From Setoptus koraiensis (Eukaryota > Animalia > Arthropoda), in assembly GCA_048013815.1 (NCBI GenBank), contig CM106586.1, forward strand, positions 17,174,001 to 17,238,000: a stretch of 64,000 nucleotides of DNA, written 5' to 3'. Shown piece after piece: positions 15,008-22,800 of this stretch; position 1 is the first letter of the stretch; every line of letters begins with the position of its first letter. The position numbers were made by a program, and so were the translations under genes. Under the pieces are notes generated by a model. That model searched no databases. It saw only the letters and a list, made by a program, of their open reading frames with translations, and was not told where the DNA came from.

Positions 15008-18000
15008 TCACATAATGATGGATGGCTTGAGAAGGGCAGTCATTATTTTAGAGTAGCCGGGACGTCTCGAGTTAATTAACAATCTAACGATTCTGTCCCG
15101 ACCACCAATTTCCGTTTTGAGAACACGAACAGTGTCGACATACTGAGCTGGAAATTCGTGAACAATTTGAAATCCTTGGTAGCCACGGAGTTTCAGTAGG
15201 TAAATAAGATGCGTCTGCCTACTGACTGCAACCAAATAGGTGCGTTTATCAAATTGAAAGTCTTCTATGTAGCTTATGGGAGGCAAATCAATTGTTTGAA
15301 ACAGGTTGAATGTTGAATTTGTTTCCGGAATAAGCGCTGGCAGTAGATAGATTTGCAAGCTAGCTGTCAAGTGAGCAGGCATCATCGAAGTGGGTTGATA
15401 ATAATACTCAACCATCTGATTACTATTTAACAGTGGGCACGACGCTCTTGGCGGATCTTGGCCAACAACCAAAAATAAGCTGAGTCCCAATCTGAGAAAT
15501 CTTGCATTGGTGGGATTTTGTGTCGGCAAGACAGCCAGTTGTTTCATGCTGGAATTGTGCGAACGGCCATCCCAAGAGTACACTCTCGTATAGGATGGCA
15601 CAGTTTCAAATATCTCCTTTTGTTGCTGGACGTAGGCCCGTTGAGCCGTGGCCAGAATGGTGTTGTTTGAGATCGGAGTGGTAAATTGAATGGAATCCAA
15701 TACAATTGAACCCGGATGCCCGGTGAAATTGAGCCATCTATTGGTCGTTTTCATTGCTGCTGAATGCGATAGCTCCAGTTCGTCACCAACAGAAAGGAAC
15801 GTCTGATCTCGGAAGCCAAGTATGTGCAACGGCGCTGAGGTGAGCCTGCGGAGTTGCTCCTCGGCGAGCCTCTTGTTTTGCCTGGCCTTATCCATAAATT
15901 CGTGCGATAAGGGCAGATGGTGCAATCCATCATAATACAACACAAGATTGTTTAATGCTACATCCGGTTGCAGCATTAAATGCTCACTGTCCAAATACGC
16001 CGACGGCCTCTCGTGGAAGACGATGGCCGGTGGTGCCGGTATCAACGCTGGTGGCGGTGACATTAGCGCTGGTGGCGGTGATATTAACGCTGGTGGCGGT
16101 GATATTAACGCTGGTGGCGGTGATATTAACGCTGGTGGTGATATCAGCGCAAGCGGTGGTGGTATTGACGCTTGTTTTGGCGGTGGCGGTATCAACACTG
16201 GTGTTGGCGGTGGTGGTAGCAACACTGGTGTTGGCGGTGGTGCTGGTATCAGCGAAAGTGGCGGCGGTGGTGGTGGTGGTGGTGTTGACGCGGCCGCTAT
16301 ACGATGCACCATCGCTTGGGTCAGGTTACAGGTGCGAGGCAAACCGTCCAGTAGGATGTCCTTCGAAACCACCACGTCCGTGAACAGCACCACGGGCGAT
16401 TTGATGTGTGTCGTATCGTAGGCTTCCGCTGAGCTCAGGTTGGGGCCGGCGAGCCGGGGCCCCGATATCGGTATTAGATTTTTGAGATGCACGCCGTCAA
16501 TTATGCCTTTCTGCTCGTCGATGAACATCTCGTCCATGTAGGCATCGCCTTCCACAATGAAGGTTCTGTTGAAGGCGTTGTTCACTTGCGACGACAACGA
16601 TATAGATTTGTCCTGCAAGTAGCTCAGGTCCAGCTCATTGATTCGTCCGTCAACAAGCAAATCTTTGTTAATTTTAATAGTGCCCAAAATTATTTTGTGA
16701 CCGCGAACAACCAAACCGTTGGCGGTCTGATAATTCGCCGAGGCGCCGTCTTTGAGCACAACTCTGCTGAGGTGATCGTTCAAGTTCAGGTCATTGATAT
16801 AGTTGACTGTTATTGGTCGCGTGAAATTGACCACATTCACGAATCGTTTCGGTCCGAAGATCTGCTGCTCCTGGCCATCCACCAGAACGGCCCGTTGGCG
16901 CAGCTCGTCAAAATTGACACCGTCGATGGTGCATCCGTGACACAGCAATTCGTTTGTCCGTATGCCTCCCAGGAACATCTTGTTTCTCAATGGCCGGTGC
17001 GCCATCAGAAGATCCTTGTCGCCGTAGGTGACCGAGTTTCGCACGAATTGAGTCAAATTAAAATTGTTCAGGCGACCGCGAAGATTAATGGGGCCCCGAA
17101 TCGTCAATTGTCCCGACACTTGCAAGTCTGTGCTCGGCTCTAGCACCAACTGAGAGTAGACGCGCTGATTTTGGCCCGATCGCAACAGAATGTCGTGGGG
17201 CCAAACCCGATTGTTGATCCTGTTGGCGAACACGTTGCCGTGCACAACAATTGTCCTGATAAATATCTCGCCATTGTTGCCCGTGGCATTGGCGTGTCGC
17301 TCGCCGGCGAGATACTGGCGCAGCAGATCGTAGCTGACATTATTTATCATGGCGCCCTGGCTGACTTTTGCCGGTCCGTTGGCCACTCGCAAAGTTTGGA
17401 AGGTCTTGCGACCGCGTATCACCTGAACGTTGTCCAGCAGTTGTCTCCGGGTCAGCTCGTCTATGGGCGCGTTCATGTTGATGGCGGCCGGCGGCACCGA
17501 CCTGAGTACGAAGTCGCCCGGGAAACTGAGCCCGTTCAATCCGCCCGGATGAACCAGAACGGACTTGGCGCGCAGTTTGCGCATTCTAACAGGTTCCCTG
17601 ATTATCTGGTCGTTGCCCGACCTGGAAATCAGTCGGTCTTTGAGCGCCCTCAACGAGCAAGTGCGATTGTTTATGTAGTTGCTGACGATATTTAAATTGC
17701 CATTGATGGTGAGCCGGTCGATGTAAATGGCCGGCGACACCTTCATCCGCTTGTCGAGCTCGTCTATGGCCTCGTGGAAATCGAAGCCGTTGATTCTGGT
17801 TCTGTTGTCGCGCTGAACCTCGACGTTGCCCACTATTCTCAGCGGCTTCTTGAAGGTCTTTTTACCTGTCACAATCTGCAGATTGGGACGGTTGCGCAGC
17901 ACGGCCTCGGCGTTCAAGTCAATTCGGTTGATGAGCCGCGTGTTCAGATTGGACCTAATGTTCACTGGACCAGTAAACCGGAAGGCACCCGTGACATTGC

Positions 18001-22759: not shown

Positions 22760-22800
22760 CACCGGCCAGTACCGTGTGAATGTTGCTGCTTCGGGCGCAT
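22760..22800 (-). pseudogene. Orphaned original start of the large secreted-protein gene (ATG at 22800, MRPKQQHSHGTGRW), now terminating in the insert after LE*
   Basis: ATG CGC CCG AAG CAG CAA CAT TCA CAC GGT ACT GGC CGG TG| joins in frame to |G TTA TTG TTA... at 20714 when the insert is removed. Confidence 0.75.

What the first reader, a model, noticed from the sequence alone, without database searches (positions are those of the whole stretch)
15008..22800. Promoter-capture chimera: a copied PABP promoter and exon 1 inserted into, and fused in frame with, a ~1,900-aa secreted-protein gene
Seen: 20715-22759 is an inverted copy of 48556-50893. Its left end carries PABP codons 1-68 and 16 nt of PABP intron 1. 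These read without a stop into [21 protein letters not shown] and on to 15008. There is no Met between the junction and roughly residue 220, so a secreted product must start in PABP-derived sequence unless the insert is spliced out. Established: PABPC1 is a highly and broadly expressed housekeeping gene. Inference: a local duplication re-wired a large extracellular protein onto the PABP promoter, and the ORF has stayed intact.
Basis: partly seen in the sequence, partly recalled or inferred. Interest (0 to 1): 0.93.

Follow-up and report, generated by a model that had tools for sequence, protein, structure and literature searches.

The report
PABP 5' cassette inserted into signal peptide
A 2-kb inverted copy of a neighbouring region, carrying the promoter and first exon of the poly(A)-binding protein gene, sits inside the signal-peptide coding sequence of a large secreted-protein gene and reads in frame with it, but no RNA data yet show that the fusion is used.

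Summary
20715-22759 is an inverted, diverged copy (about 2% overall) of 48556-50893. It holds a probable GPCR poly(A) signal, a whole coiled-coil gene, the bidirectional intergenic region, and PABP exon 1 plus 16 nt of intron 1. It was inserted at a GTTA microhomology between codons 14 and 15 of the signal peptide of a 1,901-aa EAR/EPTP-family secreted-protein gene. The old ATG is stranded at 22800. DNA contigs from two studies bridge both junctions at single-copy depth, and no empty-site allele was seen, so this is not a misassembly. All 13 closest homologues start directly with a signal peptide.

The PABP(1-68)-linker-signal-body ORF (15008-20935, minus strand) is intact. That is unlikely (roughly P<0.03) if the gene had drifted neutrally for as long as the two copies have diverged.

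The promoter-capture inference is untested. In the one RNA run laid, the gene body reaches depth 3.8 against 92 for PABP, and no contig crosses the junction. PABP-like expression is therefore not supported.

My estimates:
- chimeric ORF used, with an internalised signal: about 0.42
- fixed null allele: about 0.33
- insert spliced out as a new intron: about 0.17

This is a new member of a known kind: a chimeric gene made by DNA-level duplication. Earlier first-stage notes of this scan on the same stretch agree with the anatomy.

The parts
15008..20935 (-). Chimeric ORF of 1975 codons: PABP residues 1-68, a 6-residue linker read from PABP intron 1 and the junction, then the native signal-peptide core and the full 1,880-aa mature EAR/EPTP-family protein
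   Evidence: Full length relative to homologues.
20731..20935 (-). Copy of PABP exon 1 (ATG at 20935, 68 codons plus 1 nt). It differs from the source at 8 CDS sites: 5 synonymous and 3 non-synonymous (G57V, Y58N, F63L, all in RNP1, 20747-20773)
   Evidence: Pfam RRM_1 E 6e-9, covering only profile positions 1-50 of 70.
20715..20730 (-). 16 nt of PABP intron 1, with the natural GTAAGA donor intact, now read as codons
   Evidence: The source donor is used in RNA (X7 contig ends at 20731).
20711..20714 (-). GTTA at the right junction, which belongs to the target gene. The same GTTA begins the insert at 22756-22759 and is also present at the start of the source (48556-48559). This is a 4-nt microhomology
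20654..20713 (-). Native signal-peptide hydrophobic core (13 residues, mean Kyte-Doolittle 2.9) and c-region with small residues at -3 and -1 before Gln
   Evidence: Homologues have the equivalent directly after Met.
20936..21641 (.). Copied bidirectional intergenic region and PABP 5'UTR, rearranged. It has the 54-nt remnant 20958-21011 of a 222-nt A-rich source tract, the foreign 133-nt block 21074-21206 (also present elsewhere in the genome), and a missing 193-nt GC-rich block at 21319/21318
   Evidence: Loose ends and 3-4x depth at 21146-21338.
21642..22635 (+). Intact copy of the coiled-coil neighbour gene (292 aa; exon 1 21642-22123, intron 22124-22238, exon 2 22239-22635). It shows 5 synonymous and 2 non-synonymous differences from the source gene and a changed C-terminus caused by a 14-nt indel
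   Evidence: A spliced RNA contig carries the copy's base at 22254.
22743..22748 (-). AATAAA copied from the first AATAAA downstream of the GPCR stop codon (source 48567). It lies 12 nt inside the insert, in the path of any transcript from the old promoter
22760..22800 (-). Stranded original start of the big gene: ATG at 22800 plus 38 nt. It is in frame with 20714 onward if the insert is removed, giving a classical n-region plus hydrophobic core. As it stands it reads into a stop after 16 codons
48556..50893 (+). Source segment: GPCR 3' flank, original coiled-coil gene (48657-49659, minus strand), intergenic region, PABP 5'UTR, exon 1 (50673-50877) and the first 16 nt of intron 1 (50878-51147). 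PABP exon 2 runs 51148-52967
   Evidence: Spliced PABP mRNA contig in X7.

Best explanation
SHOWN. A 2,045-nt inverted copy of 48556-50893 was inserted by a microhomology-mediated (GTTA) DNA-level event. The insertion lies between codons 14 and 15 of the signal peptide of a single-exon gene for a 1,901-aa secreted EAR/EPTP-family protein. In the direction of the host gene, the insert reads as a cassette: a probable poly(A) signal, an antisense whole gene, a rearranged bidirectional promoter, a shortened PABP 5'UTR, PABP exon 1, and 16 nt of intron. The old ATG (22800) is cut off from the body. A new uninterrupted ORF starts at the PABP ATG (20935). The insertion is present at single-copy depth in DNA of two studies, with no empty allele.

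INFERRED.
1. The gene is still under purifying selection.
2. It is now transcribed, at a low or restricted level rather than at PABP level, from the copied promoter.
3. It is translated from the PABP ATG.
4. The 13-residue hydrophobic core, now 74 residues from the N-terminus, still acts as a signal sequence. Net positive charge lies on its N-side. It is short enough to be cleaved after the Ala-x-Cys site. The 94-residue leader, including the crippled RRM fragment, would then be removed and the mature secreted protein would be unchanged.
For: Anatomy and in-frame ORF.

DNA support: contigs 20346-20796 with 0 mismatches in X1 and X4, depth 191 and 162 against flanks of 166-215 and 171. Contigs 22730-23500 with 0 mismatches. 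No 22760/20714 joint in any DNA run. The copy-specific contig 20908-21199 is also in X2.

Ancestral state: joining 22800-22760 to 20714 gives a Met, basic n-region and hydrophobic core. All 13 closest homologues start with Met plus a signal peptide, and none has an RRM.

Constraint on the ORF: the copies differ by 1.9% overall, and by 3% and 9.5% at synonymous sites of the two coding parts. A neutral 5.7-kb ORF would stay intact with P about 0.03 or less at 0.8% per lineage, and 0.006 or less at 1.2%.

Activity of the insert's promoter region: the coiled-coil copy has an intact ORF with pN/pS about 0.09. A spliced RNA contig carries the copy's allele at 22254.

The old promoter is a poor alternative. 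Its transcript meets a stop after 16 codons, AATAAA 12 nt into the insert and 38 ATGs before 20935.

The hydrophobic core has the features of a cleavable signal. Work I recall from memory (Perara and Lingappa 1985) reports that signal sequences moved to internal positions can still direct translocation and be cleaved.
Against: No RNA evidence for a chimeric transcript. In RNA run X7 there is no contig over 20337-20670, none over the junction and none over the copy-specific 5'UTR. The body has one contig at depth 3.8 against 92 for PABP. All four runs of that study hold at most 12% of the stretch's words.

The copied promoter is damaged: a 193-nt block is missing, about 170 nt of 5'UTR are missing, and 133 nt are foreign.

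The natural PABP donor at 20730 is intact. It could splice to AG at 20663-20662 (a 69-nt, in-frame intron), which would delete the hydrophobic core (note s1-314315).

The in-frame junction has a 1-in-3 prior. Substitutions in exon 1 (5 synonymous, 3 non-synonymous) do not reject neutrality (P 0.19).

The age estimate assumes that the differences between the copies arose after the insertion. A donor allele that was already diverged would weaken the ORF-survival argument.
Confidence: 0.42

Rival explanations
1. Fixed loss-of-function allele. The insertion separated the ATG and n-region from the rest of the signal peptide and killed the gene. The in-frame fusion is a coincidence, and the ORF is intact only because the event is recent or because the copy came from an already diverged donor allele.
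For: Trace expression of the body in four RNA runs, with no junction-spanning RNA contig. The in-frame prior is 1/3. Substitutions in PABP exon 1 are compatible with neutrality. At the lowest age estimate (0.35% per lineage), P(intact) is still 0.04-0.22. The family has paralogues in other mites, seen as two groups of hits at 35-40% and 28-31% identity, so redundancy is possible.
Against: With the measured divergence (1.9% overall, synonymous 3-9.5%), a neutral 5.7-kb ORF should have acquired stops or frameshifts (P 0.03 or less). The protein is full length and alignable to its C-terminal propeller. One RNA contig does lie on the body.
Confidence: 0.33
2. The insert has become a new 2,039-nt intron. 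Transcription still starts at the old promoter upstream of 22800. A GT at 22772 (ACG|GTACTG) is spliced to the AG at 20735-20734, and the exon resumes at 20733. This restores a normal N-terminal signal peptide of 9 old residues, 7 residues from the end of PABP exon 1, the intron remnant and the junction, then the native core.
For: This is the only in-frame GT..AG pair that keeps the hydrophobic core (printed coordinates there are one too high). It would explain an intact ORF with unchanged tissue-specific, low expression.
Against: Both splice sites are weak by the general consensus. The donor has C and T at +4 and +5, and the acceptor has a poor pyrimidine tract. Known introns here are 115 and 270 nt. 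AATAAA lies 24 nt downstream of the donor. A strong natural donor sits 3 nt after the acceptor. X7 has no RNA coverage of 22675-23500, although depth is too low for this to be decisive.
Confidence: 0.17
3. Assembly artefact: the inverted copy was wrongly placed or created by the assembler.
For: Inverted duplicates a few kb long can be long-read or scaffolding artefacts. X4 may be the assembly's own sample. The left junction is bridged by only 30 nt on the insert side.
Against: The copy differs from the source by 35 substitutions and several indels, which a misplacement would not produce. Junction contigs with 0 mismatches occur in X1 and X4, which come from different studies, at single-copy depth. 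The 30-nt overlap is what a k=31 graph gives at a true repeat boundary. Copy-specific sequence is also in X2.
Confidence: 0.03

Closest known systems
Chimeric genes created by DNA-level duplications in Drosophila (population surveys of D. yakuba and D. simulans; PMC5460883, PMC4069613)
   Same: A duplicated segment carrying the promoter and 5' coding exon of one gene is joined to the body of another. The parent gene stays intact. The expected outcome is a new expression pattern and a new N-terminus.
   Different: Here the duplicate is inverted, dispersed 26 kb away and inserted inside a signal peptide, not formed at a tandem-duplication breakpoint. It also carries a whole extra gene and a probable terminator. 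Expression of the chimera is not shown.
TSPEAR / LGI family EAR (EPTP) beta-propeller proteins
   Same: The C-terminal 230 residues are predicted as an all-beta domain. Its best Swiss-Prot structural matches are the EAR domains of TSPEAR (E 7e-8) and LGI3/4/1. LGI1 EPTP is among the top PDB hits. More distant homologues carry Pfam EPTP.
   Different: This protein is much larger (1,900 aa), with a long central repeat region (weak beta-helix-like matches), a proline-rich PPPALIS repeat linker and no LRR or laminin-G domain. Pfam EPTP is not detected in the protein itself. Its nearest relatives are uncharacterised mite proteins (Aceria tosichella A0A6G1SJW0, 36% identity).
Drosophila Nasrat / Polehole / Closca (oocyte-secreted eggshell proteins; PMC6303783)
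   Same: Large secreted arthropod proteins. I recall them as EAR/EPTP-related, which would fit a low, female- or stage-restricted expression.
   Different: The link is from memory only. No search here returned them, so membership is not established.
Internalised and uncleaved signal sequences, or signal-anchors
   Same: A hydrophobic core preceded by a long N-terminal extension can still target the ER. Flanking charges here favour the N-in, C-out orientation.
   Different: Not tested for this leader. Whether the leader is cleaved or anchors the protein as type II is unknown.

Membership tests
Chimeric gene by DNA-level segmental duplication | Two identifiable parents, with the donor parent retained intact | tested here: met
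   The source PABP gene has exon 1, a 270-nt intron and exon 2, and is spliced in RNA. Homologues of the host gene were identified.
Chimeric gene by DNA-level segmental duplication | DNA-mediated rather than retroposed: promoter, intron sequence and flanking gene are copied | tested here: met
   The copy includes the intergenic region, 16 nt of intron 1 and the intron-containing neighbour gene.
Chimeric gene by DNA-level segmental duplication | Uninterrupted reading frame across the junction | tested here: met
   ORF 15008-20935, 1975 codons.
Chimeric gene by DNA-level segmental duplication | A chimeric transcript exists | tested here: inconclusive
   Only assembled contigs of one low-depth RNA run could be laid. 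None crosses 20715, and body depth is 3.8.
Chimeric gene by DNA-level segmental duplication | The structure is real in the genome and not an assembly error | tested here: met
   Junction contigs in X1 and X4 at single-copy depth, and a diverged copy.
EAR/EPTP-repeat protein family (Pfam PF03736) | Pfam EPTP match in the protein itself | tested here: not met
   No EPTP hit even at E up to 1.
EAR/EPTP-repeat protein family (Pfam PF03736) | Sequence homology to proteins that carry EPTP, over the EPTP region | tested here: met
   P0020 is hit at E 1e-29. P0020 carries EPTP at E 1.2e-9. The C-terminal pairwise alignment over that region has E 1e-5. The nearest atlas clusters are 48-65% EPTP.
EAR/EPTP-repeat protein family (Pfam PF03736) | EAR-type beta-propeller fold | tested here: met
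   The model has pLDDT 71 and pTM 0.68. The best Swiss-Prot hits are TSPEAR and LGI EAR domains, with TM 0.46 by query over residues 109-337. This is a partial match.
Nasrat/Polehole/Closca eggshell proteins | Detectable homology to the Drosophila proteins | not tested
   No Drosophila sequence was returned by any search, and literature searches linking them to EPTP found nothing.
Functional RRM (PABP RRM1) | Complete RRM with RNP1 and RNP2 consensus | tested here: not met
   Only profile positions 1-50 of 70 are present. Three RNP1 residues are changed: G57V, Y58N, F63L.
Newly gained spliceosomal intron | In-frame GT..AG boundaries that restore the host ORF | tested here: met
   One pair keeps the signal core: GT at 22772 and AG at 20735-20734.
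Newly gained spliceosomal intron | A spliced junction seen in RNA | tested here: inconclusive
   No such joint appears in X7, but coverage there is nil.

The most novel reading that the evidence does not exclude
The fusion is a working gene. A terminator-gene-promoter-exon cassette, dropped by an inverted duplication into a signal peptide, replaced the regulation of an EAR-family secreted protein. The signal sequence now works from an internal position and is cleaved, so the mature protein is unchanged. The captured RRM fragment was disabled at RNP1 by selection: two multi-nucleotide changes both fall in the 24-nt RNP1, chance about 0.014. The nested coiled-coil gene copy is kept as a functional duplicate.
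Probability: 0.35. Interest if true: 0.6.

Novelty: new member of a known kind. Interest (0 to 1): 0.45.

Why it matters
If the chimeric ORF is used, this is a clean natural example of promoter and first-exon replacement by a small dispersed duplication. A cleavable signal peptide would hide the foreign N-terminus from the mature protein, so regulation could be swapped at almost no cost to protein function. It would also give a natural test of how long an N-terminal extension a signal sequence tolerates. If the gene is instead a fixed null, the locus is an ordinary young pseudogene and the in-frame junction is chance. In either case the event documents a microhomology-mediated inverted insertion that duplicated a whole gene, and later gene conversion between the copies is suspected from a 440-nt tract without differences.

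Tried and rejected
- Word-indexed protein searches with the whole host protein and with its conserved middle found nothing useful: no hits and two unnamed hits. The exhaustive HMMER search was needed.
- Searching from a distant EPTP-bearing homologue gave only uncharacterised proteins from mites, spiders, a shrimp, a hemichordate and Hydra. No Drosophila names came back, so the Nasrat/Polehole/Closca idea stays unverified (literature).
- An exact look-up of a neighbouring ELO protein, meant to identify the organism, found nothing. The organism is inferred to be an acariform mite only from the nearest homologues.
- A search for the source of the 133-nt foreign block and of the missing blocks inside the window found none.
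- Rfam found nothing credible in the insert. The only hit was a sub-threshold SNORD31 match at E 0.085.
- X2 was first considered an RNA run. I rejected this because its contigs retain both the PABP and the coiled-coil introns and cover promoter DNA. It also shows an inverted chimeric joint and very uneven depth, which points to amplified genomic DNA.
- Mutagenic repair synthesis as the source of the 2% divergence was rejected, on general knowledge of its rates, as too weak to give 35 substitutions in 1.8 kb.
I reran it without them.
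Full report
1. OBSERVATION

The repeat finder and a pairwise alignment confirm that 20715-22759 is an inverted copy of 48556-50893. Five ungapped arms total 1821 nt with 35 mismatches, 1.9% overall. By arm the values are 1.2% (1314 nt), 2.6%, 0%, 8% and 4.5%.

The copy is shorter than the source (2045 against 2338 nt) for three reasons:
- It lacks a 193-nt GC-rich block (source 49984-50176).
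- It keeps only 54 nt of the 222-nt A-rich part of the PABP 5'UTR (source 50429-50650).
- It holds a 133-nt block (21074-21206) that has no source in the window. Part of that block also occurs elsewhere in the genome, shown by loose ends at 21146 and 21208 and 3-4x depth.

Read on the minus strand, the copy ends with PABP exon 1 (ATG 20935, 68 codons plus one base, to 20731) and the first 16 nt of intron 1 (20730-20715). From there it continues without a stop to 15008. Methionines in this ORF are at residues 1, 14, 50 and 219.

2. WHAT WAS COPIED

The source interval is a complete inter-gene unit.
- It starts 74 nt after the stop codon (48482) of a rhodopsin-type GPCR gene (Pfam). It includes the first AATAAA after that stop (48567).
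- It contains the whole two-exon coiled-coil gene on the other strand (48657-49659, 295 aa).
- It contains the roughly 1-kb divergent intergenic region.
- It contains the PABP 5'UTR, exon 1 and 16 nt of the 270-nt intron 1.

The authentic PABP gene is intact. It is spliced exactly at the expected sites in RNA run X7.

3. WHERE IT LANDED

Upstream of the insert on the minus strand there is an ATG at 22800, followed by 38 nt up to 22760. Joined to 20714 onward, this reads in frame as Met, a basic and polar n-region of 13 residues, the 13-residue Leu-rich core, then Thr-Ser-Lys-Leu-Ala-His-Cys / Gln. That is a textbook cleavable signal peptide. The insertion therefore lies between codons 14 and 15 of the signal peptide.

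GTTA occurs once in the inferred target. It also forms the first four bases of the source segment, and it now flanks the insert at 22759-22756 and 20714-20711. This is a 4-nt microhomology junction. Together with the internal deletions and the foreign block, it points to an end-joining or template-switching event and not to transposition or retroposition. An earlier first-stage note (s1-314186) gave me the lead to the stranded ATG, and I verified it.

4. THE HOST GENE

Pfam sees only the captured RRM in the chimeric ORF. The exhaustive HMMER search of the first 1200 native residues found 39 relatives, the best at 35-40% identity and E down to 2e-123. They are 1,590-1,770 aa long.

The only named close relative is an uncharacterised protein of the eriophyoid mite Aceria tosichella. 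More distant relatives come from oribatid and trombidiform mites, spiders, a shrimp, a hemichordate and Hydra, and many of them carry Pfam EPTP. The ESM-atlas neighbours are arthropod proteins of 1,700-1,850 aa, of which 48-65% carry EPTP.

The C-terminus of the window protein aligns with the EPTP-bearing part of P0020 (E 1e-5). An AlphaFold model of the last 342 residues (pLDDT 71, pTM 0.68) is all-beta. Its best Swiss-Prot structural matches are the EAR domains of TSPEAR (E 7e-8) and LGI3/4/1. LGI1 EPTP is among the top PDB hits.

The protein aligns end to end with its relatives, so the ORF is a full-length family member. All 13 closest relatives begin with Met followed directly by a signal peptide, and none has an N-terminal RRM. 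This fixes the ancestral state.

My recollection that Drosophila Nasrat, Polehole and Closca belong to this kind of protein could not be checked. I give it only as a lead.

5. IS IT REAL DNA?

Logan contigs of four runs were laid on 18500-23500.
- X1 and X4 have uniform depth of about 160-215, come from different studies, and I take them to be DNA. Each has a 487-nt contig covering 20346-20796 without a mismatch. That is 369 nt of host gene and 82 nt of insert. Its depth (191 and 162) equals that of the flanks.
- Each also has a 1985-nt contig covering 22730-23500 without a mismatch. The 30-nt overlap with the insert is what a k=31 graph yields at a true repeat boundary.
- A separate contig with the source's variants ends at 22759 and continues into the source's own flank.
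- X2 holds the copy-specific contig 20908-21199 with one SNP. I take X2 to be amplified genomic DNA because introns are retained, promoter DNA is covered, one inverted chimeric joint is present and depth is very uneven.

Misassembly is therefore very unlikely, and the insertion looks fixed in the material sampled.

6. IS IT EXPRESSED?

X7 is RNA. Its PABP contig stops at 20731 and continues into exon 2, and the coiled-coil intron 22124-22238 is spliced out (GT..AG).

In X7 the authentic PABP contig has depth 92. The host gene's body between 18500 and 20714 is represented by a single 210-nt contig (20002-20211, depth 3.8). Nothing covers 20337-20670, the junction, the copy-specific 5'UTR (21005-21171) or the old first exon and its upstream region (22675-23500). 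The other three runs of that study hold only 6-9% of the sampled words of the 5-kb stretch, against 12% for X7.

The gene is therefore at most weakly expressed there. Contigs drop rare variants, so the existence of a chimeric mRNA is neither shown nor excluded.

One positive hint concerns the insert's promoter region. The spliced coiled-coil RNA contig carries the copy's base (A) at 22254, the only discriminating site it covers. X7's PABP contig matches the window's source at the seven exon-1 differences that one search lists.

7. AGE AND CONSTRAINT

Coiled-coil gene: the two copies differ at 5 synonymous and 2 non-synonymous sites (pS 0.031, pN 0.003). The test against neutrality of both copies gives P 0.0035. 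By my own hand calculation, P is about 0.04 against neutrality of the new copy alone. The copy also keeps its ATG, its splice sites and an open frame of 292 codons.

PABP exon 1: there are 5 synonymous and 3 non-synonymous differences (pS 0.095). This does not reject neutrality of the copy (P 0.19).

Gene conversion: a 440-nt tract (21510-21950) has no difference at all, against about 8 expected. This suggests gene conversion between the inverted copies, so 1.9% is, if anything, an underestimate of age.

ORF survival: simulating neutral substitutions in the 5,703-nt native ORF gives P(no stop) of 0.52, 0.23, 0.12 and 0.01 for 0.35%, 0.8%, 1.2% and 2.5% divergence per lineage. With frameshifting indels at 5-15% of the substitution rate, P(intact) is 0.04-0.22, 0.0007-0.03, 0.006 or less, and below 0.0001 respectively.

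Unless the copy came from an already diverged donor allele, the intact ORF argues that the host gene stayed under purifying selection after the insertion. It must therefore still make a product.

8. HOW COULD A PRODUCT BE MADE?

A read-through transcript from the old promoter would fail. Its ATG runs into a stop after 16 codons. It meets the copied AATAAA 12 nt into the insert, and it carries 38 ATGs before 20935.

I enumerated all GT donors in the old first exon and all AG acceptors around the junction (printed coordinates are one too high). In-frame pairs exist, but all except one delete the hydrophobic core. The exception is GT at 22772 with AG at 20735-20734. It would give a near-normal signal peptide and make the insert a 2,039-nt intron.
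- Both sites are weak by the general consensus.
- Known introns here are 115 and 270 nt.
- A poly(A) signal lies 24 nt after the donor.
- The strong natural PABP donor lies 3 nt after the acceptor.

The simpler route is initiation in the insert and translation from the PABP ATG. The hydrophobic core then lies 74 residues from the N-terminus. It has mean hydropathy 2.9 over 13 residues, which is too short for a typical membrane anchor. Net positive charge lies on its N-side and small residues sit at -3 and -1. By established knowledge of ER targeting, such a sequence can still engage SRP and be cleaved, leaving the mature protein unchanged. I recall the Perara and Lingappa 1985 experiments with internalised signals from memory and did not check them here.

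A risk for this route is the intact PABP donor at 20730. Splicing to AG at 20663-20662 would remove 69 nt in frame and delete the core (note s1-314315; consistent).

9. THE RNP1 CHANGES

All three amino-acid changes in the captured exon fall in the RNP1 octamer (G57V, Y58N, F63L), as note s1-314251 said. At the DNA level they are two clustered multi-nucleotide changes (20764/20766 and 20749/20750). The chance that both fall in the 24-nt RNP1 of a 205-nt exon is about 0.014. This is suggestive of selection against a sticky RNA-binding leader, but it is also compatible with chance. In any case the fragment covers only 50 of 70 RRM profile positions.

10. VERDICT

The event, its direction, the in-frame fusion and the loss of the old start are all shown. 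Use of the PABP promoter is not shown, and PABP-like expression is contradicted in the RNA available.

My probabilities:
- chimeric ORF used at a low or restricted level, with an internal cleavable signal: 0.42
- fixed null allele: 0.33
- new intron: 0.17
- artefact: 0.03
- the remainder for unforeseen gene models

In kind, this is a chimeric gene formed by DNA-level duplication, a well-known route to new genes (for example PMC5460883 and PMC4069613). Its unusual anatomy is that a terminator-gene-promoter-exon cassette sits inside a signal peptide.

Noticed in passing
window 21510-21950 vs 49351-49791: A 440-nt tract of the two inverted copies has no difference, while the rest differs by 1-8%. 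About 8 differences would be expected. This suggests gene conversion between the copies.
   Followed up: partly
window 21074-21206: A 133-nt block in the copied promoter has no counterpart in the source or anywhere in the window. DNA contigs from other loci share 21146-21208 and depth is 3-4x. It is either a small dispersed repeat or a templated insertion from a third locus.
   Followed up: partly
window 39044-40051 and 45792-48482 (+): Two ORFs with rhodopsin-type 7TM matches look like the two exons of one GPCR gene, separated by a 5.7-kb intron. The second ORF encodes a very long (about 600 aa) low-complexity third loop.
   Followed up: no
window 24618-24780, 31101-31242, 38904-39283, 39647-39776: CAACAA/CAGCAA-type trinucleotide-rich tracts recur in the GC-rich stretches. 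It was not determined whether they are coding poly-Gln/Asn/Thr or non-coding.
   Followed up: no
window 16016-16288 (-): A proline-rich linker with five near-perfect PPPALIS repeats lies between the central repeat region and the C-terminal EAR-like propeller of the host protein.
   Followed up: no
window 22800-32000: No ORF over 200 aa on either strand for about 9 kb upstream of the stranded ATG. This is an unusually long gene-poor stretch next to otherwise compact single-exon genes.
   Followed up: no
window 18513/19910, run X2: An opposite-strand joint in one contig of X2, together with very uneven depth, looks like a whole-genome-amplification chimera and not a real rearrangement.
   Followed up: no
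window 3473-4450, 6720-8624, 10662-11945 (-): Neighbouring genes are a fatty-acid elongase (ELO), an ABCG-type half-transporter exon and a short-chain dehydrogenase, each read as one long ORF. This fits an intron-poor genome.
   Followed up: partly
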